In this document: in pieces, positions 7,801-32,483 of the stretch
How the letters are laid out: each line of letters starts with the position of its first letter
Numbering within the stretch: position 1 is the first letter of the stretch
From: Asterias rubens
Lineage: Eukaryota
Assembly (NCBI RefSeq): GCF_902459465.1
Contig: NC_047063.1
Coordinates: 7,254,001 to 7,318,000, forward strand
Length of the DNA stretch: 64,000 nucleotides
Reading direction: 5' to 3'
Made by a program: the position numbers and the translations under genes
Notes under the pieces: model-generated
Database searches by the model: none
Seen by the model: the letters and a program-made list of their open reading frames with translations, nothing else
Told to the model about the DNA's origin: nothing

Positions 7801-8793
7801 TTACCCAGTACCGGACGTTATAGCGCTGATATCATTGGCGTCATTCCGTTTCCTGCAAAATATCTGACGTAATCCATTACGAAACTGACGGTAATTGAAA
7901 GCGTAAATCATCGGGTTGACGCAAGAGTTTGTGGCAACCATCGCGACGGAGAGATAATAAAACCATTCCTTAAGTGTTATGTCCAGACCAAGATTAAACA
8001 TGAGAAAGATGACCTGGTTGGGTGTCCAGCAGATCAAGAACGTGATGAAAACGATCAGAAGCATCTTGAAGGTGTTACGTCTTGCCCGGAGGAGGGACTC
8101 GGCCATGTCCGGTGCGTTTACTCCACCTGGGAGATGCTGCGCTGGTGCCGGGCCGACACGGGCTGCTCCCCGCTTCATCTCTACACTGATTTGAATATAA
8201 GCAAAGAGCATCACCGCTACAGGCAAGATGTACTGCACTGTGGCCACAATTACTCCTATTATCTTCGCTCCTGGTATAGCAACCGTAACACACACCCCAT
8301 TTTGCTCCTCAAATATTATAAGATTATAGTACTTGACGATGAGAGCAAAAATCCAACACATGGCCATGGCCACACCGACTTTGAGCTTGGGCCTAGTGGC
8401 GAATAATGCCTGGTACTTGAAGGGGTAAACGATGGCGTAATACCGCTCCATGGTTAACACCAACAGGTTGAAAGTCGACATCACGGAGAAGAAGAAGAAG
8501 ATGAAAATAACCCAGACATGACAGATGAATCGCCCCAGAGCATTGCTTGGGATGGGCTCTGGAAGTGGAGCTTCACTTTTCAGAAGAATCACCGTAGAGC
8601 CCAAGAAATCAATGACGGCTTGATGAAAGATGAAGGCGTTTGTACGATTCTGCATTGATCGTACTTTGAAGATGACGAAGCAAACTAAACCATTGCCAAG
8701 GATTCCAATAATGCCAACTATGTCTTGGTAGATACGCAAAAGTAGAATGTCTTCCATGGTTTTTGTCAAATAACTGCAACTAAGGTAGCGCAA
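7801..8793 (-). CDS. Intronless class A GPCR (GPCR-1), galanin/allatostatin-receptor-like orphan, putative chemoreceptor
   Basis: Seven hydrophobic segments, TM1 GILGN, TM3 MERY, TM6 CWTP, TM7 NPMIY, TM3/ECL2 cysteines. By comparison with the paralogs the true start may be the second Met (MEDILLL, 8757). Confidence 0.93.
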   Translation of the reverse strand: MRYLSCSYLTKTMEDILLLRIYQDIVGIIGILGNGLVCFVIFKVRSMQNRTNAFIFHQAVIDFLGSTVILLKSEAPLPEPIPSNALGRFICHVWVIFIFFFFSVMSTFNLLVLTMERYYAIVYPFKYQALFATRPKLKVGVAMAMCWIFALIVKYYNLIIFEEQNGVCVTVAIPGAKIIGVIVATVQYILPVAVMLFAYIQISVEMKRGAARVGPAPAQHLPGGVNAPDMAESLLRARRNTFKMLLIVFITFLICWTPNQVIFLMFNLGLDITLKEWFYYLSVAMVATNSCVNPMIYAFNYRQFRNGLRQIFCRKRNDANDISAITSGTG

Positions 8794-10867
8794 AGTATAT
8801 AGCAGATGTTTGTAGCTTCACTTCTTAGCCATTATTTAAAAAGGAATGATCGACAGGTGCAGTTCCTTATAAACATCGCGGCGAGGTCACCGATTCACAC
8901 ACACAATTAATCTGTCAAGAATCAAAAACTAAATTAAATGAACGTTGAGGTCGCCCTTTTAATATGGAAACTTGAAAATCTGAGCCATTGTGCATGGTTT
9001 CCAAATCAGATTACTCAACTTGACTAACGTTGCAGCCGTCCCTGCTTGAGTTAATGCAACGACTGACAAAGAAGGGTTTGCTGTCTTTCAAGCCTTTAGA
9101 TGAAATATGGCTCTTAAAAGTGATATCATCTCGAAGAAGCCTTTATATTCCCACGACTGTGTATGTTTTGAAAAGAAACCTCAGTTCCTGCTTCAAGGTA
9201 ACTACAAACTGGCATATGCGATATTACAATCAAAACAATTGCGTCGTGCCTTTTATGTAATTCATCCATACTGTTGTGCGTGTTTACCTTGAACATGGTT
9301 TACCTTGAAGTAAAATTAGGGTCGAGCTTTGGTTTTTGAAACAGGAAGTTAAAGACACACTGCGGCGTTCATGTCAGTCTTCAACTTTCAAGGACTTGTA
9401 AGCGAAAAATAGACTAATACTCTTCTACTTGATTGGATAAGAGTTACTACGCGAAAGTTTCCCTTGAATTACAAGCGCTGTTTTTTAAACAGGATGTTAA
9501 ATATGCACACTACAGCGTTTACTATACCATATGACCATAAATGTTGAAGCAATAAATGTAACTAGACTTTAGGTGTTTGTGAACAAACACAAAGCTGTTC
9601 CGTGTTCTTTTGCTTGGATTATGAGCTAAAATGACCAAGGAGTCTATCATTGAAAAAAAGAAGAAAATGCTGAATGAGTTATAGTGCCACTTCCGGTTGA
9701 CCCGGAAGTAAAGGTCGACATGGGGTCATGGTAACCTAAGGCTAATCTCCAATACCCAAGGAGTCTCTAACTGAGAACAGTTTGAAAATCGATATTGCCA
9801 CACTTTGGGTTGACCTGGAAGTAGAGGTCAACTTGAGGTCACGGTGTTTCAAAATTAATCTCCAATCCCCAAGGAGTCTTTAACTACAGTCTAAAAAACG
9901 GCAGTTTACTTCTTGAGATATGGTGCTACAAAGATTTCCCAATTAAATATGCAAATATGGGTCACGTGGTTAATTAAGTACGATTTTTAACATTTTTTGG
10001 GGTCGGTGGTTTGATGTTTGATCTAGTACTATTTGATTTCACAGAACTCTTAACCACCAAACTCTGCGCTTATGATCACCATTTTCCGCTTACTGTGTTT
10101 TTCAAACATCATCGTGTCATGCATGCACACATGTTATGTTGGGCTAACAATTGAGAAAAAGAAAAGGCAACACTATCAATATAAAGATAAGAATCTAACT
10201 TAAATATTACAAAAAGAAATATTTTTTTAGTTTTGGGGGATAACAAAAATATTGTTCCCGTGCGTAGATACGAACTCGCTTGTATCAGTGAAGTTAGCGC
10301 GACTGATGACCACTAGGCTATGAGGGCCAATGCATTACTCGTGGGCTTACATGTATGTATATCAACAGAGGGGATTATGATCCGGTGAAATAATTCTCGT
10401 GTCATGATTTTGCGAACATTGTCACTAAATATGAACTGCTAACGCCTTCAACTATTAAGTAGGGTTGAAATGTAGTATTAGATGCCTTTAGGGGTTTTTG
10501 ACGAGGACGTCAGAATGAGATATTAGAAACTTTATCTTTTAGTTCATCCGAACTATTGTGTTGAAGAATTCCATCAATACACGCCAGTTTGACAAAACAG
10601 CAATAACAACCAACCACGTTAACCTCGCAGGCGAAAAAAAGCGTAGATTCGGAGAAAGGTAACTCAATCGACCTATAGAACAACGGACGTTAATAACTAC
10701 ATCCGACGAGGTTTCTCACACGAATGCATCATGGAGGAAAGCTTGTGCATCTTTGACACAATGTGATAAAAATAAACTACTCTGGACAAACCTAGCTACT
10801 TCTGATTATCTCTTGACACTGGAGTTCCGTAGCGCGGAAACACGCATCCAAAAGTAATGCGACTTAA

Positions 10868-12699
10868 AGGCACTGGACACGTTTTGTAATTGGCAAAGAC
10901 CAGCTCACTTGGAGTATCTCAACATTATGCATAAAATAACAAACCTGTGAATATTTGGAGACAATTAATAATAATAATAATAATAAGACTTGTAATGCGC
11001 ACATATCCACCCTGCTGGGTGTTCAAGGCGCAGTAAAACCAAACACAAAACAAAAACAAAACACAACACAAAAGAAAAACAGACACAACAAAATCAGTCA
11101 TTGAAAACCTGTGACATAAGATAAGTTTTGAGAAGAGACTTGAATTTTGCAGTACAAAGACAAGATCGAAGATTAAGTGGTAGAGAGTTCCAGATGCGTG
11201 GCGCGGCTGAAGAAAAAGACCTGTCACCCCATGAGTGTCGAGACTTGGGTTCAATGAGGAGAAGCATAGAACTTGATCGAAGATTCCTTGATGGAGTGTA
11301 AACTTGAAGCAGTTCAGAAATATAGTGGGGAGCCTTGCCATTAAGAGCTTTGTGGACAATGAGCATCAGCTTTAAGATGATTCGTTGAGAGATAGGGAGC
11401 CAGTGTAGTTGTTTCAGAATGGGGGTGATAGAACACGATTTTCTAGACAGTGTCACAATGCGGGCAGCAGTATTTTGGAGCCGTTGAAGTCTGGAAATCT
11501 GGTTGTTAGGAAGACTGTAGAGAAGAGCATTTCCGTTGTCAAGGCGAGAAGTAACAAATGCGTGAATGACCTTTTCAGTGGCACTTTTGTCCAAGTACTT
11601 GCGAATCTTACCTATATTCCTGATGTGATATGATGATAAACGAACAATGTTGTTGATGTGTGGCTGAAGTGTCATTGATGAATCAAAAATAACCCCTAAA
11701 TTCCGAGCTTTCAGCGAGGGAGCTATCCGAGCATCACCGATGGAGATGTATGGCACTGAAACCTTAGTTAACTGTTGACGTGACCCAAATAGAAGGAACT
11801 CTGTCTTATCATCATTTAACTTCAGGAAGTTTTGTTGTGTCCAACGTCGAATCTCTTGGATGCATTTCTCAAGTTTTGCAATAGATGCATTGGCGTTTTC
11901 TTGAGAAGATTTAAACGTGATGTATAGTTGAGTGTCGTCTGCGTACACATGGTAATTCAGATTAAATTTCAGGATGATGTCACGAATCGGTAAAGTGTAT
12001 AGCGTAAACCACTGCGGGCCGAGTACCGACCCCTGTGGCACAGAGTAGTTCAAAACAACAGGGTCGGATATCGCGGTGCCAATACATACATGCTGAGTTC
12101 TATTGTAGAGATACGATTTGCACCATGCTAGGGCTGTGTCCTCTATGCCAAGGTGATTCTGGAGCCGAGAGAGAAGGATGTTGTGATCGACAGTGTCAAA
12201 AGCAGCACTCAAGTCTAGCAGGACTAGTGCTGTAAGGTTACCATTGTCCATTGCAGAGAGAATATCGTTGCTCACACGGACTAGTGCAGCCTCGGTCCCA
12301 TGGAAAGGCTTGTATGCTGACTGGAACACGTCGGACAGGTTGAAAGTATGAATGTGATCAGAAATACGTGATGAAACTACTCGTTCGATGACTTTTCCAA
12401 GATATTTTAAGTTTGCAAATTTTTTAAATTGGTCGTTAAAATCAAGAGAGAACATTTGGAAGAAAAAACAGCCTTGTCGCACAGGTTTTGTGCTTTCAGA
12501 TGCCATAAATTCGATACCTCAGCTGAGGTCTGTTATTAAATTTAAATATTTTAGTGAGAAATCACTTATTTCTCAAAAACTACGTTGCTTCAGAGGGAGC
12601 CGTTTATCACAATTTTGTGTACTATCAACAGCTCTCCAAGTAAGTTTTTATGCTAACATTCCTACTATTTCCAGTAATTCACAATAGTGTCTGGTGCCT
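10868..12699. mobile_element. Kolobok-like MITE K1 split by a LINE (parts 10868-10966 and about 12427-12699)
   Basis: TTAA|AGGCACTGGACAC at 10868 and GTGTCTGGTGCCT|TTAA at 12699. The K1 consensus ctcaattggtcg is broken at aatt. Confidence 0.8.
10967..12418 (-). mobile_element. L2/CR1-group LINE, heavily 5'-truncated copy of the 1780-4217 element
   Basis: Near-identical RT C-half (only a few aa differences such as ARLEKW/AKLEKC), same 3' UTR and (TAT)n tail. The first ~30 aa of ORF 11094-12506 come from the flanking MITE read antisense. Confidence 0.93.
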
Positions 12700-13179
12700 T
12701 TAACGTCCGGTTTGACGTCAAAGTGACGCCACATGTGACAAACAGCATGTTCCGATTCAATTCATTTCAATAAATCATTTATTTCATGATGGCAGTTTTA
12801 AGACAAATGTACAAGTTATTTAAAAGTAAATTATTATTTAGGTGTGAATAAATAATGTCAAAAAATCAAACAGCGCAACAAAATGGCGTCACAAAACAAC
12901 GTGTCCCGATTCAATTTATTTCAACAAACATTAATTTCATGAGTGCAGTTACAAAGACAAGTACAGTCTCTGGAATGCGCTACCGCTTCACATACGTAGC
13001 GAACAGAAACTCATCTCTTTTAAATGTAATATAAAAACCTATCTTTTTAATACCGCTTTTTAGCTTTTTATGTCTTCTTCTATGGTCACCTTGCCAGTTA
13101 GTTTAGAATTTTAGCATAGTTAGGGTTAGAGGCGTCTGTCTCCTGAAAAGGTCAAAACATTACCGATGCCAGCAGAGAT

Positions 13180-13377
13180 AGGCCTATGTAATAAGTAATT
13201 AATTAGTTCTCTGTTGGCGGGACAGACGTATCCCCATACTTTTGTAACCAGTCTTTTTTCTTTGTCTTTTTCTTCCACTCTGTGCTTTTTAACAAGTGTT
13301 CTGTGCCTCTGATCATTTTGTATGTAAGGGGCGCAATATAAATTTTAATTATTATTATTATTATTAATGTCTATACT
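13180..13377 (+). mobile_element. LINE 3'-end remnant
   Basis: T-rich UTR, then gcctctg...aggggcgc stem, aatataaat and a (ATT)n tail. Confidence 0.45.
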
Positions 13378-14454
13378 ATGTATTGTACGTGTGAATAAAC
13401 AAAAATCTTCAAAAATTTCAAGAACCTTTAAATCATACAGCAATATACAATCACAGCCAACATGTAGGAAAACGTGAAGCAAATGTGATTTTATGCTTTT
13501 CTCTATGACCGACAATGACTTGGGCAGGACAAGGACAAAAACGAAACAGAGAGAGAGACCAAGTAAATGATGTAAGATGACTGCCATGACTGATTGATTT
13601 CGTCATCCACTCCGAATTTTGGAATTGAGAAGTTGGCACAGACATTCGCCCCTGATTTTCTGCTATAAAAAAAACCCGAGAATTTCGGCTTTGTCCAAAA
13701 GGTTGCATCAAATTGTTTATATCCAGTAGAAATTTTGAAATTTGGTTTGGTGTGTAAAATTCATTCAAATGTTCTGCTTGAAAGTTTTTTGAAATTTGGT
13801 TGCTCATAAACGTTAGTTCAAATTCTCTGCTAGTAGGAATTTGAAAATTTGGTTTCGTGTGAAACGTCATTAAAATTTGCTGCAAGTAGAATTGAAATTA
13901 TTTGTTTAGCTGTACTCTTTCGGACGAGGTAAACAATCCAACTTTCTGATAGCACAATTTGTTTTTTTAGAAAAGAGAATTTTTGGGGGAAATGGATTGA
14001 CCACTTTTGGTCCTCCACACCATGGTTTATCACAACAAAAGAATACCACGATATTGCTCTCTGGCGCTACTTTTGGCAGCTCTAGAAAACCTTTACTAAT
14101 ATTATAAAAACCTTAACTTTTATCAAGCATCAGATAATCTCTGCGCACAATTAAAGGGAAAATTGAAAAAAAAAATAAGATAGATTACTGTGTGTTTTCT
14201 TAATATAGGGATATTGACAAAGACACTGTATGCTGACACGGCCATCATTTATAGTTATTGGGGCTATTGGTTGTGCTAGCATTTTAGCTGCAGGTTGCAT
14301 AGCCTGACCATCTGACGTCACACTTCGAGGCTCGTGAATTATGCCAGAGAGTGGCTCGAGCCTGCGTCAATAATTGTACCACGGTCACGCGTGGTACGGA
14401 TGTACCGTTGATCTCACATTCATTTCGCAGTCAAATTCTACGTACACGTTTATG

Positions 14455-15666: not shown

Positions 15667-16605
15667 TTATTCCAAAGCATTAGTTTGCTCAAATCTCTTG
15701 CAAAATATCTGACGCAATCCATTACGAAACTGACGGTACTTGAAAGCGTAAATCATCGGGTTGACGCAAGAGTTTGTGGCAACCATTGCGACAGAGAGAT
15801 AATAAAACCATTCATTCAGCTTAATGTTAATGCCAAGATTAAACATGAAGAAGATTACTTGGTTCGGCGTCCAGCAGATCAAGAACGTGATGAAAACGAT
15901 CAGGAGCATCTTGAAGGTGTTACGTCTTGCCCGGAGGAGGGACTCGGCCATGTCCGGTGCGTTTGCTCCACCGGGAAGATGCTGGGCTGGTGCCGGGCCG
16001 ACACGGGCTGCTCCCCGCTTCATCTCCACACTGATGCGAATGTAAGCGAAGAGCATCACAGCAACTGGGACGACGTATTGAAGGATAACAACAAGAGTGC
16101 CAATAATGTTGGCTCCTGGAATGGAATTCCGAACACAGATGCCATCTTCAACTTTTGCGTAGAAAAGAAGATAAAACTTAGTAGCCAAATCAAGAATCCA
16201 GCACATCACAACTGTTAAAGCAACTTTCAGCCTAGGCCAAGTGATGAACGCCGCCTGGTACTTGAAGGGGTGAACTATAGCAAAATACCTCTCCATAGTC
16301 AACACCAACAGGTTAAACGTCGACAACGCAAAGAAAAAGAAGAGTGTTAAGTTAGTAAACCATAATCGGCAAATGAACCATCCCAATGGTCCATTTTGAA
16401 TAGGATACGGTAGCAAGAGCTCACTCTTAAGCAAAATAACCACAGAGCTCAAGAAGTCAATGACTGCTTGATGAAAGATAAAGGCGTTTGTACGCGTCTG
16501 CATTGATCGTACTTTGAAGATGACGAAGCAAACTAAACCATTACCCAGGATCCCAATAATGCCAACGATGTCTTGGTAGATACGCAGAGCAAGCAGGCCG
16601 TCCAT
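15667..16605 (-). CDS. Intronless class A GPCR (GPCR-2)
   Basis: 312 aa, 7TM, MERY, CWTP, NPMIY. Paralog of GPCR-1 with a distinct short C-tail (KRFEQTNALE). Confidence 0.93.
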   Translation of the reverse strand: MDGLLALRIYQDIVGIIGILGNGLVCFVIFKVRSMQTRTNAFIFHQAVIDFLSSVVILLKSELLLPYPIQNGPLGWFICRLWFTNLTLFFFFALSTFNLLVLTMERYFAIVHPFKYQAAFITWPRLKVALTVVMCWILDLATKFYLLFYAKVEDGICVRNSIPGANIIGTLVVILQYVVPVAVMLFAYIRISVEMKRGAARVGPAPAQHLPGGANAPDMAESLLRARRNTFKMLLIVFITFLICWTPNQVIFFMFNLGINIKLNEWFYYLSVAMVATNSCVNPMIYAFKYRQFRNGLRQIFCKRFEQTNALE

Positions 16606-18552: not shown

Positions 18553-18996
18553 TGCAGTAAAGCAAAACAATGGAATCCTGCCAAAGTTCCCAGATTTACG
18601 GTAATTAACGATCATAACAAAAGTACATACGAATTGGCGCCAGGATTCTCAGCATGGACGCACTTTCCGCTCTTTTCCTCAATTAGGTTTTGGTATTATC
18701 ATTGTAACTGTATTTTACGGGGTTCTGTCTTGGAGCTCTTATCAATGTTTAGACATGTATATTTCTATTTTTATCTTTTAACGGACAATAAAAAATAATT
18801 GAAATTAAGGATACAATCAATTATCTTAAGTAGAGAATGCTCTAGGAGTCACTAGATTCATAAAATAAGCAATTATCAAAATGGTAACTTAAATGGTTTG
18901 TACACATTTGTTAATGACAAAAAATGGCAATAAAAGCTCACTTTGGTAATACAAAAAGTACGGCAGCTTTGGATGGAGCATTTTGAGAAACTTTTA

Positions 18997-19553
18997 ATGG
19001 AGGTTATTTTCTCACAGAGAGTAACTCAATGGAGGTTATTTTCTCACAGAGAGTAACTCAATGGAGGTTATTTTCTCACAGAGAGTAACTCAATGGAGGT
19101 TATTTTCTCACAGAGAGTAACTCAATGGAGGTTATTTTCTCACAGACATTCACTCACTGGATGTTATTTTCTCAAATACAGTCACTCAGTTGAGGTTATG
19201 TTCTCACACGCCGTCTCTCAGTTGAGGTTATTTTCTCACACGCAGTAACTCAATGGAGGTTATTTTCTCACAGAGAGTAACTCAATGGAGGTTATTTTCT
19301 CACAGAGAGTAACTCAATGGAGGTTATTTTCTCACAGAGAGTAACTCAATGGAGGTTATTTTCTCACACGCAGTCACTCACTGGATGTTATTTTCTCACA
19401 GACAGTCACTCACTGGATGTTATTTTCTCACACACAGTCACTCAGTGGAGCTGAGTTATTTTTTCACACGCAGTCACTCAATGAAGGTTATTTTCTCACA
19501 GACAGTGTCTCCATGGAAGTTATTTTCTCACAGACAGTCTCTCTATGGAGGTT
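18997..19553. repeat. 32-bp minisatellite, about 17 units
   Basis: Unit ATGGAGGTTATTTTCTCACAGAGAGTAACTCA, starting at 18997, 19029 and onward. Confidence 0.95.
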
Positions 19554-19812
19554 AACTAATCTCAAAGTGCACTGAAAACTACACTATCGCTCTAACAACA
19601 CGATATTTTGTGCTAGATGTATCTCACAAATTGTTTTTTTTTTATAGTGTGAACCAACAAATAGAATTGAACTTGGAGTCACTTTACATATTAGAAAATA
19701 GGATTTTAAAAAACTGTGCATGGTGGAAGTATAACTAAGATGGGTTTTCGGAAACACATTGTGAATATCTCTTTTGAGTAGTGTTGGTCCTAAAAAAGAA
19801 CCAGTTTTTAGC

Positions 19813-20994: not shown

Positions 20995-21954
20995 TTACCC
21001 GGTACCGGTTGATATTGTGCTCATATCATTTGCTTGATTTCGTTGGCGGCAAAATATCTGACGTAATCCATTACGAAACTGACGGTACTTGAAAGCGTAA
21101 ATCATCGGGTTGACGCAAGAGTTTGAGGCAACCATTGCGACAGAGAGATAATAAAACCAGCCACTGAGCGGTATATCGAAACCGAGATTAAACAACAGAA
21201 AGATAATCTGGTTGGGTGTCCAGCAGATCGAGAAAGTGATGAAGACGATCAGAAGCATCTTAAAGGTGTTGCGTCTTGCACGGAGGAGGGACTCGGCCAT
21301 GTCCGGTGCGTTTGCTCCACCGGGAAGATGCTGGGCTGGTGCCGGGCCGACACGGGCTGCTCCCCGTTTCATCTCCACACTGATGCGAATGTAAGCGAAG
21401 AGCATCACAGCAACTGGGATGACGTATTGCATGACTACCACAAGAGTTCCGATAATGGTAGAACCTCGAATCGCAACCGGAACGCACTTTCCGTTCTTTG
21501 CCTCAAAATTGAAGAGGCAGTATACTATCGGGATAAAGGCCAGAACCCAAGACACCGCCATGCACACACCGACTTTGAGCTTGGGCCGAGTAGCGAACGC
21601 TGCCTGGTACTTGAAGGGGTGAACGATGGCGTAGTACCGCTCCATGGTTAACACCAACAGGCTACTCGTCGACTCCAGAAAAATGTAGAACTGGAGGCAG
21701 TTAATATGCCAGACGTGACAGAGGAACCAGCCTAGGCCATCGCTTGGGATTATCTCAGGCACTGGGATTTCACTTCTCAAGACGATCAAGATGGAGCCCA
21801 ATAGATCAATGACTGCCTGATGAAATATGAAGGCGTTTGTACGCGTCTGCATTGATCGTACTTTGAAGATGACGAAGCAAACTAAAACATTGCCAAGGAT
21901 CCCAATAATGCCAACGATGTCTTGGTAGATACGCAAAACAAGAGTTTCCTCCAT
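20995..21954 (-). CDS. Intronless class A GPCR (GPCR-3)
   Basis: 319 aa, 7TM, MERY, CWTP, NPMIY. C-tail is homologous to GPCR-1 (QANDMSTISTGTG vs DANDISAITSGTG). Confidence 0.93.
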   Translation of the reverse strand: MEETLVLRIYQDIVGIIGILGNVLVCFVIFKVRSMQTRTNAFIFHQAVIDLLGSILIVLRSEIPVPEIIPSDGLGWFLCHVWHINCLQFYIFLESTSSLLVLTMERYYAIVHPFKYQAAFATRPKLKVGVCMAVSWVLAFIPIVYCLFNFEAKNGKCVPVAIRGSTIIGTLVVVMQYVIPVAVMLFAYIRISVEMKRGAARVGPAPAQHLPGGANAPDMAESLLRARRNTFKMLLIVFITFSICWTPNQIIFLLFNLGFDIPLSGWFYYLSVAMVASNSCVNPMIYAFKYRQFRNGLRQIFCRQRNQANDMSTISTGTG

Positions 21955-21974
21955 GTTTTTTGGGTTGTCTCGGA

Positions 21975-22831: not shown

Positions 22832-22833
<2 letters not shown>

Positions 22834-22869
<36 letters not shown>
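22834..22869. repeat. (TA)n microsatellite
   Basis: Directly visible; abuts the hammerhead-bearing fragment. Confidence 0.95.
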
Positions 22870-22871
<2 letters not shown>

Positions 22872-22872
22872 T

Positions 22873-22911
22873 GCCTCTGAAGAAGGTCCGGATTGGATCG
22901 AAAGCTAAGGC
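22873..22911 (+). ncRNA. Minimal type I hammerhead ribozyme motif (Penelope-type)
   Basis: gcct-CTGAAGA-a-GGTCC ggatt GGATC-GAAA-GC-TA-aggc. Stem II is fully paired (one G-U). Same family as 978-1016. Confidence 0.75.
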
Positions 22912-24220
22912 CATCTACCCTATTCATTATATATATACATTAACATATGATTCCAATTGGTGCTTTGCGCAGTTTGGCCCTCATTCGACAAAATAATGAA
23001 ATCCATGTAATGTACCGTAAGTGATTTGCCCTTCTGCACCATCGTGGTTATTGTGAACATAGTATATAAGTTCTTAGATGTTAGATGTAAATATGTTAAA
23101 GAAATACCACGGTAGGGTAAAAAGAAAACTCAGTTTCAAAAGAGTATGTTATTTTAAACTAGACTTATTGTTCTCATTAGGCTTTTAAATTTAAAGTTTA
23201 GCAATTCAGTTTTACTTTACTAAAATGTCCTTGATGAAGGTTCCAAAGATCAAGCATTAATGTCCTTCATTTAGGTCCCTATTTATTTGAGATTTCTTTC
23301 CGTAATATCACGGCATCATGGCGTAATGGGTTTTCGATCACATCGCAGGGGAAATGTTCCACGAAACTAATTAAGTTAACAACCTTCTAACCCACATTTA
23401 ACAAGACACTTTCAGTCCATTAAAAAAAAGCAATTAAAATCCTGGACTCGTGTCAACCCTTCATTCCGAAAGATTGTTCTCGCCAGTGGTTCACTCCCGA
23501 GTCAGAGTTGACTCGGATCAGGATACGTCCCTCAGTGGACCTGACCAAGTTTAACAGAGAGTTCAAGATAGTGGGTTTTGAGGCATTGCACGGTGATGTA
23601 TCAATCTATACTACCCACAAAGGTAGTAGACACATGGTGTTACCGTAAACCAAACAATCGTATATTGATCTGGAATATTTGTGCCCAAATTACAAAGAAA
23701 TTTGTCAAACTGACGCATAATCCAGGTCAAAACCACATTTGTTACCAACTTCCTATGGTCAGTCTGACCCACAAATAAGTGAGGACCCTCTATGATCCGC
23801 TATTCGGGTCAATTGTGACCCGGAAGTTTTTACTGCAATTGTGACCTTGAAGTATATTGCAAGCCGGCACCATCGAGTTTTTTTACGAACAAGAAGGACA
23901 AACTGTCCCCATTTGAAAAGCACTACGATAGTGGCATTTTCGTATAGCGAAAGAAACAAGTTGCAACGGTCGACACAGTATATGACGTGCAAAATGATAC
24001 AATGCTCTCTTTTATGATTAAATGATGGGAAATTACTCAAGACCCACACTTACTTGAGACACACCACTAACCCTTTTTGCCACCCTTCTACCTGTAAAAA
24101 CAGCCATTAGGATTTACGATCGAAAATTGGTATCGATTGAAATAACATACTGGCCCGACTGCAAACATTATTTGGGATGAAATAGTTCCTGCAAATTTAT
24201 TTAGCCATAAAAGCTTTTAA

Positions 24221-24552: not shown

Positions 24553-25896
24553 TTAAACAAAATCCGAATTTTCTGTTCAAATGACCACACACGGTGGCTG
24601 AAAACGAGGCAGTAAAAAAGATGGGTCATTTCAGACTGATGAAGCTTTCATTCATTTTCAACCATGCGTTTATCAATATTTTTCCCCTTATGCACAAACA
24701 CTCAAGTTCAGACCTTCGTTTGTCTCATTTCATTTTCTAAGAAACGACCACTCCAGTTTCTATATTATAGAATCGAGGGGGTTAGCAAATATACTTTGGT
24801 CTCATATGGGAAGATGTTCAAGTTGGTTGATAATTAACTTATTTATTGGTTTTCAGGAGGTTTGCAAAAAACATCACAGTTTTTTCGTCTTCAACGAATT
24901 GCATTCCGATAAAAATAAAACTGAAGTTGAACATGTTTGAAAATGTCAACATTTTATATTTTTAGTAATATTGTTATTTTGCTTTAAAGGGATGTCGCTT
25001 TTTCTGGTAGTTTTTCGCACAACGTATTAAGCCTACCACGAAAGCGTGCTTAGATCCAGAAAGAGCACCGGAGGCCTGTTGATATTATAAAACATTGTGA
25101 GAAACGGCTACTTTGAAGTAATAGTTTAGAGAGAAAGAGGTAATTTTTACCCCAAATTTGGATGTGAGAAAGACTCCGGGCATGAAACCTTTCTCAGCCA
25201 TCTGAAAGCACACAACTCTCATGCAACACGGGTGTTTTTCTGTCATTATTTTTCTTGCAACTTCGATGACCAATTGAAGCCCACTTTTTTACAGGTTTGC
25301 AATATTTATAAATTATGTTGGGATGCATCAAGTGAGGGTACTCGTCTTTGACAAGTATTCTTGAAGCATGCCCTAAATGTAAAATACTCAAAGCGCAGCC
25401 GCGAATCGTTCCGAACATCCTATATTAATCAATACAGGACTCCTATATGCTACATTTTGGAGTAACGGAACAGTATGGCATAATGGCATAATGAAGTAAG
25501 ACACGTGACGCGTGTCGACCAATCCAATGGCAAAAGGATCCACAAGTGCCGGTTCAAAATAATATTAATGACTTGTTATCTTACATAAAGTGTGGCTGAT
25601 TGTCATACACATTCTATAATAGTAGAACAAAAAGAGAGTTTGATTTATCATACAGATTACTTAATAATTTACAATTTTAAAATGAGTGATAGAATTTTAT
25701 CTCATAAATGTGTGCATGATCAGAACAACGTTAACAGTATAGGCCGTTTCCAAAATACCCATTACGCAAGCGCTAACTGTTGTTGTGTCTTGATCGTTAG
25801 CTAGACCAGCATGCACCTCATTCCAAGCCTAAGTCTGCTGCCACCTAGCGTTTATTGACTGTGACATACAGGTTGATATGCACTGCCTATATATAT

Positions 25897-26470
25897 AGGG
25901 AAGACACACGTTTGGTTTACTCATAAACAGATATTAACTTAAAACCTTACTTGGTAACGAGCATTTGAGAGCTTTTGATAGTATAAAATATTGTGAGAAA
26001 CGGCTCACTCTGAAGCAGCGTAGATTTTTAGAAAAAGGTAATTTCCACTGAAATAATTATGAGAAGACTGGTCTTTAAAGATTCTATGTCAGATTTTTGG
26101 CCCAAACCATTAAAAAATAGGTTGTTTTGAGTGAATGGTATTTCAAAGAGTATCACCCGCCCTAACGAAAAAAGGGTTTAACTTTTACTTTTAATGGTCA
26201 GGAACCATGACAAAAATTTAGAACGTTTCTTATTAAACACATAAGAATTGGTCACGTGATATATTGTCAGGATCCCGATCCCTAATTTTGAGCACTTTAT
26301 TTCACTGCTACTTTAATTTGCGGACTTTTTCGAGCAATGGCTCAAATGAAAGCTTGTAACTTTCTCGACCCCCATCAAAATACCTATTGAATTTTAAATC
26401 AAAATCTTTGGGTCAAATCGGCCAAAAATCTGACATGGCATCTTTAACATACCAAACGTGTGCAGTGCCT
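25897..26470. mobile_element. Kolobok-like MITE K1 carrying a nested TTAA element
   Basis: K1 left end (agggaagacacacgtttgg) and right end (gtgtgcagtgcct|ttaa) surround the 26079-26443 insert. Confidence 0.75.
26079..26443. mobile_element. Second Kolobok-like family (AGAT..ATCT termini)
   Basis: TTAA|AGATTCTATGTCAGATTTTTGGCC ... GGCCAAAAATCTGACATGGCATCT|TTAA. Confidence 0.8.
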
Positions 26471-27341
26471 TTAATAATTCCATGCGTTTGATGTGAATGT
26501 TTACATCCCCTACTATTCAGTCCTTTACAATGTCAAATACTTAACCTATTATACCTTCCTCCAATTATTTATATGTCCTTCTTTCATCAAGGAAATCTCG
26601 TTTCTAAGAACATTGTTTATATGCGGTTGGACATCTGAAGTGCTTTTAGTTTTGTCCATCTTTGACTTAATCCCAAGTAACTTAACTCCCGTAATATCAA
26701 AGGAGATGATAATTCAACCTAAGGTTAACAATGTATGGTGAAAAGAAAAGGATTATTTTTTTTTATTAAGAAAGCTTCTGACTCATGGATAAGGCTATTA
26801 CAAAGGCTTCAAAGCCAGACAGAGAGATTGCCCGGAAATGCACATCTCTTTGCTTGAGCAAGAGTGACCAAGTGCTTTTTATTTTTCCTGCGGCCTCCCA
26901 GACCAGCAAAGACAGCGGTTTCTTCCTTTTCTATGATAACACTCATAATAGAATAATATAAAAATAGATAATCCATAGGATAGAGACGATGTAACCTATG
27001 AAATCATATTGTTTACAAGCAAAGAGCCACAGAGCTTGGGCTTCCAAGCAAGCAAAACAAAATACAATGGTTGGAAACTTACACTTTTATAGAAAATGCA
27101 TTGACTGATTGCGAGCAATTCTCAAAACTTGTTCAGATATGGCTTCTTATAAAGCACTCATATACACATCACTCGGTGACGCTCAGATACTTCAAAGTTC
27201 AAAATTTTCCTGCAAGGCATTGGGAAGCTACTTGTTTTGTATTGATGAAGTACACTGTATATGAAACTAATTAACTAATATCACCAAGTCCACAATGTAA
27301 TGGTTTACAATAGGTGCTGCGGCGCAAATTATATGGAGGTA

Positions 27342-27507
27342 ATCAAACCAGGAACAACGGGATGAACCATTCCCTCTACGATAAGAGTACCGTGTTCTTT
27401 GTTAAACAACACGGGACCAACGGTTCCACATAGTGACCGATCGGGACTCGAACCCACACCAACACCATCAGAGCTTGAGCTGGGTTGTTATCGGCCCGGC
27501 CACGACA
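27342..27507 (-). mobile_element. tRNA-derived SINE (family S1), degenerate
   Basis: Minus-strand head gtcgtggccgg...gtgggttcgagtccc (A/B boxes), shared with the copies at 50245-50950 and 58948-59152. Confidence 0.65.
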
Positions 27508-27659
27508 TGTCAGAAATGTTATTGAAATTTGTGTAAATGTTTCCCATAGGAAATAAGGTCATTGTTGTGGTGCTAAAGAAGGACTATAGGATGTCATAAC
27601 AGAGTATCCGCAAGAACATTATCATTGCACACAAAACTTGAACCAACAGTGCTTACAAT

Positions 27660-27831
27660 GGGTGCGTTCATTTAGCTTCCCTGGGTCGACCTTACAGTGC
27701 TCACTCGGGTGTGCCCCTGACGCACTCCACAAGCAGGGTACTGGGGGCTGACCCGGGTGAGCCCCGTCAAAGCTATTCGAACGTTCCGGGGCAGACCGGG
27801 GTCGACCCAGGGAAGCTAAACGAACGCACCC
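27660..27831. mobile_element. MITE with GGGTGCGTTC termini
   Basis: TIRs GGGTGCGTTCATTTAGCTTCCCTGGGTCGACC / GGTCGACCCAGGGAAGCTAAACGAACGCACCC. A longer relative lies at 43053-43403. Confidence 0.8.
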
Positions 27832-28093
27832 TCTACAGAAACTGGGGTGTTTAAACTAACATTATCCGTTGTCACATTGCTGGTACAGAGAGCGAGTTAT
27901 AGCACCTTTTAGTATTGTTTACGTAGTTCTGATGGACATGCGCACATTACCGAAAACAATAGATTTGACCTGGCGAGTCTTCTACCTACAAGCGTCCCAA
28001 AAATCCCCTATTAATTTTGCAAAAACTCGACGTGTTATTTTCACAAACTTGGGTTCTAACTGGCACCAAAACATGATATTGAATAGGGAGACG

Positions 28094-28200
28094 ACCAACC
28101 AGGGCTCATTGGTAGAGTGCGGGCACAACAATCGGGAGGTTGTTGGTTCAAATCCTACTCTAGGTGTCTTTGTTCATCCCCAATTCGTTTAAATTGCCCA
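28094..28200 (+). mobile_element. tRNA-derived SINE (family S2)
   Basis: gctcattggtagag...ggttcaaatcc A/B boxes. Relatives at about 44110-44270 (-) and 51755-51830 (+); another tRNA-like head at 10257-10322 (-). Confidence 0.6.
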
Positions 28201-28667
28201 AAATCTTTTAAAACTGTCACATGTTAACTTAGAGTAATTATGTGTTATGGTAATCACAATTTAACACGGCCGGTCGAATGTCTGACTTGCACCAGCTGGC
28301 ATTCTCAAGTGATTATCTTTTACATATCTTTCCCCAGCACAGCAAGGCCATTTCTCCAAGAATCCTGTTTAAAAATGTCACCGATTCACATGAAAATAAA
28401 CAGCCGTCTTCCACTTGTCAATTTGCTTTGATTTCACCAAGAACACACGAAAACAGTTCGCCCGTGCCTGAATCCACATCAGCAACATTACTTAGCCACA
28501 AGACCCACTTTCTGGGTTATTTTTTCCTTGAGAAACAAACGTGCCTTCAGGACCAAACCAGTCATTAAAATTTACAGTGATTTTAACTGATAACCTTGTG
28601 TGGTTGTAGCTAGGTCTGACATTCTATGGGAAAACAGCGTTACTCGAAAAATTACACTACCCTTTAA

Positions 28668-29028
28668 AGTAAATGTACGCGTTTGGTAGTTACTCAAAAC
28701 AATGAACTTAATTACTTGGTAACGAGCATTGGAGAGCTTTTGATAGTATAAAACATTGTGGGAAACAACTCCCTCTGAAGTAACGTAGTTTTTGAGAAAG
28801 AGGTAATTTCTCAATAAAATAATACAAGACTTCTAGCTAGAAATCTTTTATTCCTATCTGAAAGCACACAAATTCGTCCAACAAGAGTTTTTTTTCTTTC
28901 ATCATTTTCTCGCAACTTCGATGACCGATTGAGCCCAAATTTTCACAGGCTTGTTATTGTATGCTTATGATGGGATACACCAAGTGAGAAGACTGGTCTT
29001 TGACAATTCCCAAACATGTACCTTCCCT
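28668..29028. mobile_element. Kolobok-like MITE K1 variant (AGGGAAGGTACA-type end)
   Basis: TTAA flanks, K1 body, right end TGTACCTTCCCT|TTAA. Confidence 0.8.
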
Positions 29029-29458
29029 TTAAGTACATAGATCATAATTTGACAAAGAGATGTGACATGTTATTCACATCCATACATAACATGCGTTTAA
29101 ATTTTGAAACTGAAAAACGTTCTCAATTACCAATAAATAAATACTTAGAGTAAGGCTGTTTTGTACGGAAGCGTATTGCCGCCACATGAATAATTAAAAT
29201 CTCTCTTATTGTGTACGTACACAATACATGTATATCAAAACCAAAGTCCAAAACTTATAGTGTACGTACACACTATCTTATTATGTACGTATATGATAGG
29301 TTTATACGTACGCGAAAAGTTATTGCGTAAATGTACGAGATAAATTTGGATTTATTGTGTACGACGTACACAACAAGGACTCATTGTGTACGTACACAAA
29401 GGACTCATGTATTCAATACATTCAGCGGCAACACGCTTCAGCTTTGCAATGGAAAGGC

Positions 29459-30181
29459 CCTGGTGGCCGGTGTGGCGGTCTCGGAGCTCCGGGGGTCTCA
29501 GAGCTTCAGATTACCAAATAAGGTAGTATGAGGTCATGCCGTGCCTGCGCACACCAAGCGAAAGCATTTTAGCGCCGTGCCGAGTACACTGTCGTAGTAG
29601 ACTTAGGGACTAGTCGTTTATTGTCCCACGCGGTGAGATAGTCGAGTTGCAGCGGTGCTCTCCGCGCGCGAACTGCTGGTTGCGCAACTACTGCGCTGCC
29701 CGACTCCAGGCAGCTCGTGGTAGTCGCGCAACCAGCAGTTCGCTGCAACTCGACTATCTCACCGCGTGGGACAATAAACGACTTGTCCACAAGTCTACTC
29801 TCGTAGCTGTCATGGCGGCGCCCAATGTGTGGTTAACGAGTGAAGCGTATGCGACAGTATTGTGAAAAAGTAATCACGTTTATAATAAGTATTTTAGGAG
29901 TGGGAATTACAAAGAAGGTTCTTCTGAAAGCCAGAAAAGGGTTTTGGGCTGCCCCTCGGAAAAGCACTCGTACGATAAAAACAACAGGTCTCGAAGATTT
30001 ATTCGTGGCGATAGGGGGGCGGGGACTCACGCCCGCAACGACAGCATGCTACGTCATCCCGGAGAACTTGGCACGCCAGAGATCTGAGACCGTGATTACT
30101 GCGTGCCGAAATCTCCGGTGACGTCACCCGGAGCTCTGAGACCGCCGGAGCGCTGAGGCCGCCACACCGGCCAACAACAGG
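29459..30181. mobile_element. GC-rich TIR element containing a nested long palindrome (29571-29820)
   Basis: TGGCCGGTGTGGCGGTCTC near 29464 and GAGGCCGCCACACCGGCCA near 30155-30173. No clear TSD. Confidence 0.65.
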
Positions 30182-30431
30182 TAATACATGCTCCTCAAAA
30201 TGTTTAAAGGTCAATCCCCGCATAACGTGGTGAATTATAGTCTTCGATAAGTGGTACAATTCATGTTGGAAAGGCAGAATACATTTTGAATAATCTATTA
30301 GCAAATAATCATGACGAAAAAGGTATTGATATAATTAGCTACAGACAGGCAACATAACAGTTAATGCAGACACCACATCACACTTGGACTACATTCATTC
30401 TTGAAAAGTCGTCCAACGTATGAACTCGCAC

Positions 30432-31478
30432 AAAAAAACAGTGATGTGAACCATATTATTTAGGGAGTATATATGTCTTCTTGAAGATGTGTTGGAGACC
30501 CAGCAGTAGCGATGAGACGACGCCTCTAACAATAGTTTAACCAGAACATTGAAGCCAAAGCGAAACTGGCGATATTATTTTGAACTCAAACTTAAAGCAG
30601 TGATGGTGGACCATATTTAGGTAGCTTGTATGTCTTCTTGAAGCTGTGTTGGAGACCCACGTAAACGATAAATATGAGATGTCAAGAATTGGGCAACGTC
30701 TTATACAAAGAAAGCACAGTTCCTTTAAACCAGAGCGAAACAGGCGGTATTAGAACTCACACAAAGGCACTGGACACTATTGGTAATTACTCAAAATTAT
30801 TATTGCAATAAAACCTTACTTGGTAATGAGTAATGGGGAGAGATGATAAAAACATTGTGAGAAACGGCTCCCTCCTAATGAAAGTTTTCGAGAAAGAACT
30901 AAACACATTAATTTAGATTTCGAAACCTCAGATTTAGAATATGTGAGGTATCGAAATCAAGCATCTGAAAGTACACAACTTCGTGTGACAAGGGTGTTTT
31001 TTCTTTCATTATTATATCGCAACTTCGACGACCGAATGAGCTCAAATTTGCACAGGTTGGTTATTTTATGTTGAGATACACCAAGTGAGAAGACTAGTCT
31101 TTGGCAAATTACCAATACTGTCCAGTGTCTTTAAAGCAGTGATGGTGAGCCATACTATTTAGGTAGTTTGTATGTCTTCGCTTGCAGCTGTGTTGGATAC
31201 CCACAGTATCGTTATTGAGCTGTCAAGGTTGGGGCGACTTCTTCTACAAAGACAAAACAGTTCCTTTAAACAAGAGCGAAACTGGCGGCACTTCAACTCA
31301 CACTTAAAGCAGTGGATGGTGAACTATTAGGTAGTTTACGTCTTCTTGCAGCTGTGTTGAATACCCACGTACATATAGTGATAGATGAGCTACCAAGAAT
31401 TGGGCATGGCAACGTCTTCTACAAAGAAAGCACAGTTTCTTTAAATCAGAGCGAAACTGGCGGTATTTGAACTCACAC
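30432..31478 (-). repeat. Four tandem ~170-bp copies of the GPCR-4 3' end (helix 8, C-tail, stop and start of 3' UTR)
   Basis: Units at about 30432-30591, 30592-30762, 31131-31303 and 31304-31478 align to 31479-31647 (gtatttgaac...gcgaaact...ttcctttaaa...gctgtgttgg...taggtag...gtgatggtg). Confidence 0.85.
30765..31130. mobile_element. Kolobok-like MITE K1 inserted at the TTAA between two C-tail repeat units
   Basis: AGGCACTGGACAC ... TGTCCAGTGTCT|TTAA; the left TTAA is decayed to ACAA. Confidence 0.85.
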
Positions 31479-31508
31479 TTAAATATTAGTGATGGTGAAC
31501 CTTATTAT

Positions 31509-32483
31509 TTAGGTAGTTTGTATGTCTTCTTGAAGCTGTGTTGGGTACCCACCAGTAGCGATATATGAGCTGTCAAGGTTGGGACGACTTTTTCTACAAA
31601 GACAGAACAGTTCCTTTAAACCGGAGCGAAACTGACGGTATTTGAACGCGTAGATCACTGGATTGGCGCAGCAGTTGGTTGCTACCATTGCAACAGACAG
31701 CAAGTAATACCACTCGTTGAACTCCAAATCCAGCCAGCCAACATTAAACATGAAGAAGATCAGTTCGTTTGGCGTCCAGCAGATCAAGAATGTGACGAAG
31801 ACGATCAGAAGCATCTTAAAGGTGCTACGTCTTGCACGGAGGAGTGACTCGGCCATGTCCGGTGCGTTTGCTCCACCGGGGAGATGCTGGGCTGCTCCCC
31901 GCTTCATCTCCACACTGATGCGAATGTAAGCGAAGAGCATCACAACAACTGGGATGACATACTCGAAGAAGGCAGTAAGGATCCCTACAGCCCTTGATCC
32001 TGGAACGGAAAGGCATTCGCCATCTTGTAAGATGAAGATAAGCATTAGATAGGACTTCATAGCGGCAGCGATGACCCAACAAATCGCCATGATGACCCCA
32101 ACTTTCAGGCAAGGATACTTCATGAATACCGCCAGATACTTGAAAGGGTACACGATTGCAAAGTACCGCTCCATGGTCAACACCAACAGGTTAAAAGTTG
32201 AAATGACGAAGAAGTAAAACAAGACGAGGTTAGAGAACCAGACATGGCATAGAAACCAGCCTAGGGCGTCATCGGGAAGCGGACTGGGCAAAGGAACTTC
32301 GCTCTTCAAGAGAACCATTGTAGAGCCCAATAAATCAATCACTGCTTGGTGAAAGATGAAGGCGTTCGTACGAGTTTTCATTGATCGTACTTTGAAGATG
32401 ACAAGACAAACAAGGCTATTCCCCAAAATGCCTAGAATCCCTACAAAAGTCTTGTATATACGCAGAGCTAATATATCCTCCAT
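31509..32483 (-). CDS. Intronless class A GPCR (GPCR-4), more divergent paralog with shortened ICL3
   Basis: 324 aa, 7TM, MERY, CWTP, NPVIY. Lacks RVGPAPA in ICL3. Confidence 0.93.
   Translation of the reverse strand: MEDILALRIYKTFVGILGILGNSLVCLVIFKVRSMKTRTNAFIFHQAVIDLLGSTMVLLKSEVPLPSPLPDDALGWFLCHVWFSNLVLFYFFVISTFNLLVLTMERYFAIVYPFKYLAVFMKYPCLKVGVIMAICWVIAAAMKSYLMLIFILQDGECLSVPGSRAVGILTAFFEYVIPVVVMLFAYIRISVEMKRGAAQHLPGGANAPDMAESLLRARRSTFKMLLIVFVTFLICWTPNELIFFMFNVGWLDLEFNEWYYLLSVAMVATNCCANPVIYAFKYRQFRSGLKELFCLCRKSRPNLDSSYIATGGYPTQLQEDIQTT

What the first reader, a model, noticed from the sequence alone, without database searches (positions are those of the whole stretch)
7801..32483. GPCR cluster with homogenised cytoplasmic face and divergent extracellular face
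Seen: GPCR-2 15932-16070 and GPCR-3 21281-21419 (ICL3/TM5 end) are identical at 138/139 nt, synonymous sites included. TM1-ICL1 differs at only about 3 of 106 nt. ECL1/top of TM3, TM4-ECL2 and ECL3 differ extensively even at the protein level (e.g. FEEQNGVCVTVA / YAKVEDGICVRNS / FEAKNGKCVPVA / ILQDGECLSV). The C-tails group differently (1 with 3) from ICL3 (2 with 3). Known: echinoderms have large lineage-specific expansions of intronless, short-N-terminus rhodopsin-type receptors proposed as chemoreceptors. Inference: patchy gene conversion keeps one G-protein interface while the ligand pocket diversifies, a modular receptor-diversification system.
Basis: partly seen in the sequence, partly recalled or inferred. 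Interest (0 to 1): 0.72.

Follow-up and report, generated by a model that had tools for sequence, protein, structure and literature searches.

The report
Patchy gene conversion in starfish receptors
Four neighbouring orphan receptor genes of the common starfish are old duplicates that keep copying short stretches of DNA into one another; this is a clear but ordinary case of gene conversion, not a newly found diversification machine.

Summary
The window is Asterias rubens chromosome DNA with four intronless class-A GPCR genes on the minus strand (G1 7801-8757, G2 15667-16605, G3 20995-21954, G4 31509-32483). G2 and G3 are identical at 138/139 nt in TM5-ICL3 and differ at 3/106 nt in TM1-ICL1. 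Elsewhere the copies differ by 30-40%, and their flanks do not align.

Synonymous divergence between paralogues runs from about 0 to saturation along the gene. On a structure-based partition fixed in advance, it is 0.24-0.53 on the cytoplasmic side and 0.60-0.83 on the extracellular side. Orthologues in A. amurensis show equal synonymous divergence in both partitions (0.066 vs 0.080), so synonymous constraint does not explain the pattern.

Two footprints date from after the species split:
- A 25-nt G1-type tract sits in the tail of the A. rubens orthologue of an outside paralogue.
- Three A. amurensis paralogues share derived synonymous states in TM1.

Gene conversion in short tracts is therefore well supported.

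The adaptive "modular system" reading is not supported. The same cytoplasmic motifs are conserved in other starfish orders. The extracellular face has the same dN/dS as the cytoplasmic face between species (about 0.17-0.18).

The scan noted other GPCR arrays elsewhere in this genome, but not this mosaic.

The parts
7801..8757 (-). G1: intronless class-A GPCR gene, 318 aa. A. amurensis orthologue is P0094 (L007:18863-19819), 2.6% nt divergence.
15667..16605 (-). G2: intronless class-A GPCR gene, 312 aa. Orthologue is P0095, 2.4% nt divergence.
20995..21954 (-). G3: intronless class-A GPCR gene, 319 aa. There are two A. amurensis co-orthologues, P0092 and P0093, each 3.6% divergent.
   Evidence: structure model
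31509..32483 (-). G4: intronless class-A GPCR gene, 324 aa. It is the most divergent copy. Orthologue is P0012, 2.4% nt divergence, and flanking synteny with A. amurensis is 89-95% identical.
15932..16070 (-). G2 arm of the TM5-inner/ICL3 tract; 138/139 nt identical to G3 21281-21419.
21281..21419 (-). G3 arm of the TM5-inner/ICL3 tract.
16481..16586 (-). G2 arm of the TM1-ICL1 tract; 103/106 nt identical to G3 21830-21935. G1 8649-8741 matches G3 21846-21938 at 90/93.
21830..21935 (-). G3 arm of the TM1-ICL1 tract.
15716..15810 (-). G2 arm of the TM7-helix 8 tract; 94/95 identical to G3 21065-21159. G1 7854-7941 matches G2 15699-15786 at 86/88.
21065..21159 (-). G3 arm of the TM7-helix 8 tract.
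7854..7941 (-). G1 arm of the TM7-helix 8 tract.
8024..8119 (-). G1 arm of the ICL3-TM6 tract; 95/96 identical to G2 15869-15964.
31828..31944 (-). G4 arm of the TM5-ICL3 tract. It matches G2 15941-16060 at 98/99 and G3 21272-21409 at 114/117 aligned nt, although G4 is about 30% divergent elsewhere.

Best explanation
G1-G4 are old tandem duplicates of an Asterias-expanded orphan class-A GPCR family. Short-tract non-allelic (interlocus) gene conversion repeatedly overwrites parts of one copy with another.

Tracts of about 25-140 nt start and end inside segments that purifying selection already keeps similar. These are TM1-ICL1, the inner half of TM5 through ICL3 to the inner half of TM6, and TM7-helix 8, with ICL2 involved only in some pairs. 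The extracellular-side segments (outer TM2-ECL1-outer TM3, TM4-ECL2-outer TM5, ECL3) are too diverged to support heteroduplex, or conversions there are removed by selection. They therefore keep the true, old age of the duplicates. The result is a mosaic gene with near-zero synonymous divergence in the cytoplasmic-side blocks and saturated divergence elsewhere.

Shown here: the mosaic, its independence from synonymous-rate variation, and conversion events both before and after the A. rubens / A. amurensis split.

Inferred: the reason tracts are confined (a homology requirement and/or selection against pocket homogenisation), and a shared transducer interface as the source of the protein-level constraint.
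For: 1. Paralogue homology stops within about 10-100 nt of the CDS ends. Orthologous intergenic DNA, by contrast, is 89-95% identical between species. The duplicates are therefore old.
2. NG86 pS in 20-codon windows runs from 0.00 to about 1.0. On a Ballesteros-Weinstein partition fixed from the AlphaFold model, pS is 0.60-0.83 on the extracellular side and 0.24-0.53 on the cytoplasmic side, with Fisher P from 3e-10 to 3e-4.
3. Control: five orthologue pairs give pS 0.080 (extracellular) vs 0.066 (cytoplasmic). Four-fold-site divergence per segment (0.02-0.115, and 0/48 in the short IC4) shows no consistent cytoplasmic deficit. Synonymous sites in the tracts are free to change.
4. The pattern is pair-specific.
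- In TM5, G2, G3 and G4 share sequence while G1 is the outlier.
- In TM7-H8, G1-G3 share sequence and G4 is saturated (pS 0.83-0.93).
- In ICL2, only G1/G3 are similar.
5. Partition trees: extracellular internal branches are 0.19-0.36, whereas IC3 is a star with paralogue paths of 0.04-0.06. The edge-unlinked model beats the edge-proportional model (2dlnL = 64.4, df 18, P = 4e-7).
6. Post-speciation events.
- A. rubens P0077 carries 7 G1-type sites in CDS nt 921-945 where its orthologue P0003 is G3-type. Both sides of the tract are shared by the two orthologues. Scan-statistic P = 2e-4.
- A. amurensis P0093, P0094 and P0095 share derived synonymous T and C at alignment columns 42 and 78. G1-G3 and P0092 lack them.
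7. The same mosaic appears in the independent A. amurensis assembly.
Against: - With only four sequences, the Sawyer-type test is modest: the best pairs give P = 0.003 and 0.016 and the other pairs are not significant.
- BIC prefers the simpler edge-proportional model (8596 vs 8655).
- No GC-bias is seen at four-fold sites (0.46 vs 0.51, not significant).
- IC3 also has lowered pS (0.24-0.28) between paralogues 0.13-14.6 Mb apart. This needs either long-range conversion or some extra constraint on that block.
- IC4 shows 0/48 four-fold differences between orthologues. The count is small but compatible with some constraint there.
- The direction of most events cannot be polarised without a third species.
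Confidence: 0.86

Rival explanations
1. Adaptive modular system. Conversion is favoured by selection because it keeps one co-adapted G-protein/arrestin interface across the array while ligand pockets diversify.
For: - Conversion tracts coincide largely with cytoplasmic-side blocks.
- The lineage-specific ICL3 core AQHLPGGANAPD is shared by nearly all Asterias paralogues, including G4, which sits apart from the other Asterias genes in the extracellular-partition tree.
Against: - The flanking cytoplasmic motifs are conserved without any possibility of conversion in Patiria, Acanthaster and distant outgroup members.
- Orthologue pN/pS is equal in the two partitions (0.18 vs 0.17), so there is no ongoing pocket diversification.
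- ICL2 is not generally homogenised.
- Asterias monophyly is not rejected (AU 0.355), so a shared ICL3 core can be common descent.
- Confinement of tracts to similar sequence is the default expectation of homologous recombination.
Confidence: 0.1
2. Purifying selection only. The blocks are similar because amino acids and synonymous sites (codon usage, mRNA structure) are constrained, with no sequence exchange.
For: - The protein motifs in these blocks are conserved family-wide.
- IC4 has 0/48 four-fold differences between orthologues.
- IC3 pS is lowered even for distant paralogues.
Against: - Orthologue pS is equal in the two partitions (0.066 vs 0.080).
- The same IC4 sites are saturated against G4 (14/17 four-fold sites differ).
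- Similarity is pair-specific.
- Paralogue-matching clusters separate orthologues.
Confidence: 0.03
3. Recent duplication followed by very fast divergence (positive selection or hypermutation) of the extracellular-side segments.
For: pN is highest in the extracellular segments (0.21-0.31 against 0.06-0.12).
Against: - Flanks and UTRs of the paralogues are unalignable beyond about 100 nt.
- Extracellular pS is saturated as well as pN.
- Since speciation the extracellular segments have evolved at the ordinary rate (pS 0.080, pN 0.014).
- Every copy has its own orthologue in A. amurensis.
Confidence: 0.02
4. Assembly artefact: chimeric or collapsed assembly of a repeated gene array.
For: Tandem paralogues with shared 100-140-nt identical blocks are hard for short reads.
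Against: - Each gene is matched along its whole length at 96.4-97.6% identity by an orthologue in an independent assembly of another species, with the same mosaic.
- Contigs of another public run (X10) lie on G3 and its flanks with few differences.
Confidence: 0.01

Closest known systems
Gene conversion in mammalian vomeronasal V1R (and olfactory receptor) gene clusters
   Same: Both are intronless chemoreceptor-type GPCR genes in tandem clusters. In both, orthologue/paralogue relations between sister species are blurred by lineage-specific conversion (PMC2644715).
   Different: Here the tracts are short (25-140 nt) and recurrent at the same three or four blocks, and they leave the extracellular-side segments at saturated divergence. 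The animals are echinoderms, and the family is unrelated to V1R beyond the class-A fold.
Acanthaster planci putative olfactory receptors (ApORs) and sea-urchin surreal-GPCRs
   Same: Both are lineage-specific expansions of rhodopsin-type GPCRs in tandem arrays in echinoderms. Conservation is higher in TM and intracellular parts, and extracellular loops are divergent (PMC5442662).
   Different: That paper does not mention gene conversion (0 occurrences). It reports an ICL3 with almost no similarity in its example cluster, whereas here ICL3 and its flanks are the most homogeneous part. Whether G1-G4 homologues are among the ApORs was not tested, and no expression data were obtained here.
Partial gene conversion with divergent segments preserved between duplicates (e.g. 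RHD/RHCE, primate red/green opsins; theory of Innan and Teshima)
   Same: Both show mosaic duplicates in which conversion homogenises most or some blocks, while function-defining blocks stay distinct. This comparison is from my own knowledge and was not checked in the library.
   Different: Here there are four to five old copies rather than a pair. The homogenised blocks are the minority of the gene. The preserved blocks have no shown functional difference.
Siglec-5/Siglec-14 paired receptors
   Same: Gene conversion acts on one functional module of a receptor pair only. PMC4042635 was listed; the details are from my own knowledge.
   Different: The arrangement is the inverse: there the ligand-binding domain is homogenised and the signalling parts differ.

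Membership tests
Class A (rhodopsin-type) GPCR | Seven-transmembrane fold with helix 8 | tested here: met
   The AlphaFold2 model of G3 has mean pLDDT 81.9 and pTM 0.79. Its helices are 3-31, 38-62, 73-111, 124-147, 165-201, 215-256, 266-289 and 291-310. The best PDB sequence hits are adenosine A2A and beta-1 adrenergic receptors, E about 1e-21.
Class A (rhodopsin-type) GPCR | Signature residues: N1.50, D2.50, E/DRY, W4.50, P5.50, CWxP, NPxxY, and the Cys3.25-ECL2 cysteine pair | tested here: met
   N22, D50, C79, E105, W136, C157, P180, C244, W245, N282, P283 and Y286 are invariant, and R106 and Y107 nearly invariant, in a 57-sequence family alignment. Precomputed Pfam hits are PF00001 and PF10320.
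Interlocus gene conversion / concerted evolution | Synonymous divergence between paralogues is heterogeneous along the gene | tested here: met
Interlocus gene conversion / concerted evolution | The heterogeneity is not explained by local synonymous rate or constraint (orthologue control) | tested here: met
   Orthologue pS is 0.080 (extracellular) vs 0.066 (cytoplasmic). The edge-unlinked model beats the edge-proportional model, P = 4e-7, though BIC prefers the simpler model.
Interlocus gene conversion / concerted evolution | Different segments support different relationships among copies | tested here: met
   In TM5, G2, G3 and G4 group against G1. In TM7-H8, G1-G3 group against G4. In the tail, P0003 groups with G3 (91/99) while its orthologue P0077 carries a G1-type tract.
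Interlocus gene conversion / concerted evolution | Orthologues differ by clustered changes that match a paralogue of the same genome, or paralogues share species-specific derived states | tested here: met
   7 sites in 25 nt, P = 2e-4; columns 42 and 78
Interlocus gene conversion / concerted evolution | GC-biased outcome (frequent but not required) | tested here: not met
   GC at four-fold sites is 0.51 (cytoplasmic) vs 0.46 (extracellular), P = 0.26.
Echinoderm candidate chemoreceptors (ApOR / surreal-GPCR type) | Lineage-specific expansion in tandem arrays | tested here: met
   G1-G3 fall in an Asterias-only clade of 16-17 genes (96/91-93). Arrays lie at about 4.0, 6.1 and 20.6-20.8 Mb of the A. 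amurensis chromosome.
Echinoderm candidate chemoreceptors (ApOR / surreal-GPCR type) | Expression in sensory organs (tube feet, sensory tentacles) | tested here: inconclusive
   The RNA runs found hold only 4-12% of the sampled words. One 151-nt contig at depth 2 lies on the shared TM1 tract. The two well-covering runs look like DNA.
Named peptide/amine receptors (somatostatin-5-like, galanin-2b-like, etc.) | Orthology to the vertebrate receptor whose name the automatic annotation gives | tested here: not met
   Near-identical orthologues and close paralogues carry different names, including somatostatin, allatostatin-A, galanin, opioid, neuromedin-U and histamine. The best solved-structure matches are A2A and beta-1 at E about 1e-21 with no specific affinity. 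The genes are best treated as orphans.

The most novel reading that the evidence does not exclude
Conversion is not just tolerated. It is maintained by selection as a way to keep a single, co-evolving transducer interface, including the Asterias-specific ICL3 core, synchronised across an array of receptors with fixed, distinct pockets. A change in the G-protein or arrestin partner could then be tracked by all receptors at once.
Probability: 0.1. Interest if true: 0.65.

Novelty: new member of a known kind. Interest (0 to 1): 0.4.

Why it matters
- It gives a clean, quantified example of short-tract non-allelic conversion in an echinoderm receptor array. No paper in the searched library links echinoderm GPCRs to gene conversion in this way.
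- It has a practical consequence. Whole-gene trees, dS-based dating and dN/dS scans of starfish (and probably other echinoderm) receptor expansions will be misled unless conversion tracts are masked.
- It also shows that these receptors keep stable, distinct extracellular faces between sister species. This argues for fixed ligand specificities rather than ongoing diversification.

Tried and rejected
- Sawyer-type test: with only the four window genes it had low power. I therefore moved to an a-priori structural partition and an orthologue control.
- GC-biased conversion: looked for and not found.
- Deep concerted evolution of the ICL3 core across starfish orders: the protein trees show G1-G3 in an Asterias-specific clade, and the AU test does not reject Asterias monophyly including G4 (p = 0.355). 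Common descent can therefore explain most of the lineage-specific core.
- P0003 as orthologue of G1-G3: I first took A. amurensis P0003 to be the only relative of G1-G3. Cluster look-up then showed true orthologues hidden inside 90% clusters.
- Expression: the runs found were DNA-like or held only conserved fragments.
- Literature: the olfactory-receptor review mentions only biased gene conversion as a confounder of selection scans.
- ApOR membership: I did not test whether the Acanthaster homologues are among the published ApORs.
Full report
**What is there.**
The window carries four uninterrupted ORFs of 312-324 aa on the minus strand: G1 7801-8757, G2 15667-16605, G3 20995-21954 and G4 31509-32483. 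They have the class-A GPCR signatures GN, D2.50, ERY, W4.50, P5.50, CWTP and NPxxY, plus the Cys pair C79/C157. They carry Pfam 7tm_1. The AlphaFold2 model is a seven-helix bundle with helix 8 (pLDDT 81.9).

The genome is Asterias rubens (record LR699093.1, 25.66 Mb). Automatic names of relatives are inconsistent (somatostatin-, galanin-, opioid-, allatostatin-like). The nearest solved structures are A2A and beta-1 receptors at E about 1e-21. I therefore treat the genes as orphans.

**The observation.**
- G2 15932-16070 and G3 21281-21419 are identical at 138/139 nt.
- G2 16481-16586 and G3 21830-21935 differ at 3/106 nt.
- Further tracts join G1, G2 and G3 in TM7-helix 8, join G1 and G2 in ICL3-TM6, and join G4 with G2/G3 in TM5-ICL3.
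- Overall nucleotide identity is only 68-81%.
- Similarity between copies ends within about 10-100 nt of the CDS.
- Intergenic DNA aligns at 89-95% identity with the sister species.

So the copies are old, and the identical blocks are younger than the genes.

**Is it synonymous?**
NG86 pS in 20-codon windows runs from 0.00 to about 1.0. I fixed a partition before looking at divergence. It uses the model's helices and Ballesteros-Weinstein mid-membrane positions. The extracellular side is residues 1-16, 53-93, 138-178 and 243-276 of G3. The cytoplasmic side is residues 17-52, 94-137, 179-242 and 277-303.

| Comparison | Extracellular pS | Cytoplasmic pS | Test |
|---|---|---|---|
| Six paralogue pairs | 0.60-0.83 | 0.24-0.53 | Fisher P 3e-10 to 3e-4 |
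| Five orthologue pairs (pooled) | 0.080 | 0.066 | see control below |

A runs test on identical-amino-acid codons gives P = 7.5e-5 for G2/G3. A Sawyer-type permutation on silent sites gives P = 0.003 for G2/G3 and 0.016 for G2/G4.

**The control that separates conversion from constraint.**
Cluster look-up showed that every gene has an orthologue in A. amurensis:
- G1 = P0094
- G2 = P0095
- G3 = P0092 + P0093
- G4 = P0012

A fifth paralogue, P0003, has an A. rubens orthologue, P0077, just outside the window. I fetched all the loci.

Orthologues differ by 2.4-3.6%. Their pooled pN is 0.014 (extracellular) and 0.011 (cytoplasmic). Four-fold sites show no consistent cytoplasmic deficit. So synonymous sites in the blocks change at the ordinary rate, and the low paralogue divergence there must reflect recent common ancestry of those blocks. 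A model with free branch lengths per partition beats one with proportional branch lengths (2dlnL = 64.4, df 18, P = 4e-7). AIC agrees; BIC prefers the simpler model.

In partition trees the extracellular data give internal branches of 0.19-0.36 between orthogroups. IC3 collapses to a star with paralogue paths of 0.04-0.06.

**Pair-specific patterns.**
- In TM5, G2, G3 and G4 are alike and G1 is the outlier.
- In TM7-helix 8, G1-G3 are alike (pS 0.06-0.09) and G4 is saturated (0.83-0.93).
- In ICL2, only G1/G3 are alike.
- In the C-tail, G1 pairs with G3.

A site-wise constraint would affect all pairs alike, so this argues for exchange.

**Events after speciation.**
P0077 (A. rubens) and P0003 (A. 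amurensis) are orthologues with shared 3' UTR. Seven of their 24 differences fall in CDS nt 921-945. There P0077 has the G1/P0094 states and P0003 the G3/P0092/P0093 states, and both sides of the tract are shared by the two orthologues (scan-statistic P = 2e-4). This is a micro-conversion from a G1-type donor about 20 kb away.

In A. amurensis, the three adjacent genes P0093, P0095 and P0094 share derived synonymous T and C at alignment columns 42 and 78. Pairs of them also share states at columns 52 and 92. G1-G3 and the second G3 copy, P0092, lack these states.

A cluster of six or seven differences between G3 and P0092/P0093 in ICL2 may be a third event, but its direction is unclear.

**Why the adaptive reading is not shown.**
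- The motifs flanking ICL3 (KRGAARVGPAP ... SLLRARRNTFK), ERY-ICL2 and NPxxY-helix 8 are conserved in Patiria, Acanthaster and in 40-47% identical outgroup members. Conversion with these genes is impossible there, so purifying selection suffices for the protein conservation.
- Between the two Asterias species, pN/pS is 0.18 (extracellular) and 0.17 (cytoplasmic). The pocket is conserved, not diversifying.
- G1-G3 sit in an Asterias-specific clade. G4 sits apart, but Asterias monophyly is not rejected (AU 0.355). The Asterias-type ICL3 core can therefore be largely inherited.
- The simplest mechanism is passive. Recombination needs near-identical sequence, which only the constrained blocks offer, and each conversion renews that identity. 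Selection against homogenising the pocket may add to this. Both steps are inference.

**Caveats.**
- IC3 has lowered pS (0.24-0.28) even between paralogues 0.13-14.6 Mb apart.
- IC4 shows 0/48 four-fold differences between orthologues.
- Some extra constraint on these two blocks, or rare long-range conversion, is not excluded.
- No GC bias was found.
- No expression evidence was obtained.

**Comparison with what is known.**
Gene conversion in chemoreceptor GPCR clusters is documented for rodent V1Rs (PMC2644715). Tandem arrays of lineage-specific rhodopsin-type receptors with conserved intracellular and divergent extracellular parts are described for Acanthaster, without any mention of conversion (PMC5442662). 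No paper in the library combines echinoderm GPCRs with gene conversion on this topic. The scan's earlier notes describe other GPCR arrays in this genome as ordinary.

**Verdict.**
The mechanism, short-tract gene conversion, is confirmed. The "modular diversification system" remains unproven. It is a new, clean member of a known kind.

Noticed in passing
window 30420-31647; L001:11184-11321: Downstream of G4 lie three or four degenerate tandem copies (about 170-nt period, 73-88% identity) of the 3' end of its own CDS (helix 8 plus tail, aa 280-324). At least one copy is also present in A. amurensis. This is the subject of another note (s1-150855). It looks like a relic of local tandem duplication rather than a used 'library'.
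   Followed up: partly
window 7644-7671 (copy of 7857-7884): A perfect 28-nt copy of the helix-8 coding segment (NGLRQIF region) sits about 130-160 nt downstream of the G1 stop codon. It is also present behind the A. amurensis orthologue. It is possibly a footprint of an old abortive recombination.
   Followed up: partly
window 31892/31893 (G4, after CDS nt 591): A. rubens G4 lacks 21 nt (ARVGPAP/RVGPAPA) of the otherwise family-invariant ICL3 N-flank that its A. amurensis orthologue retains. The deletion is bounded by a CAGCCC direct repeat, which suggests slippage. The functional consequence is unknown.
   Followed up: partly
window 7801-8757 (G1): G1 differs from its A. amurensis orthologue by 8 amino acids, almost all in the conserved cytoplasmic-side blocks (pN 0.020 there vs 0.003 on the extracellular side). 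In several cases G1 has a unique state at positions otherwise invariant. This may be relaxed constraint on G1 in A. rubens.
   Followed up: partly
window 1873-4083 (+) and 11094-12506 (-): Two copies of a reverse-transcriptase ORF of a non-LTR retrotransposon are 98.7% identical over 792 nt. One is inserted between G1 and G2, so the element was active recently.
   Followed up: no
window 18996-19554: A tandem repeat array with roughly 32/64-nt periodicity and 82-90% identity between copies lies between G2 and G3.
   Followed up: no
window 22841-23007 (also 977-1043): A short element has enormous contig word depth in all four runs laid (up to about 150,000). It matches the element noted elsewhere in the window as a hammerhead-like repeat (s1-151005), so it is a very high-copy dispersed repeat.
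   Followed up: no
L008:6001-6960 and L007:3137-4096 (A. amurensis): A. amurensis has two copies of the G3 gene (P0092 and P0093), 2.7% apart and 10 kb apart, where A. rubens has one. Only P0093 took part in the TM1 homogenisation with its neighbours.
   Followed up: partly
L004/L005 (A. amurensis, about 6.08-6.10 Mb): A second, younger three-gene array of the same family (P0011, an unnamed 320-aa gene, P0008) shows the same mosaic. pS is 0.00-0.10 in IC3, IC4 and the tail, against 0.23-0.57 in EC2/EC3.
   Followed up: partly
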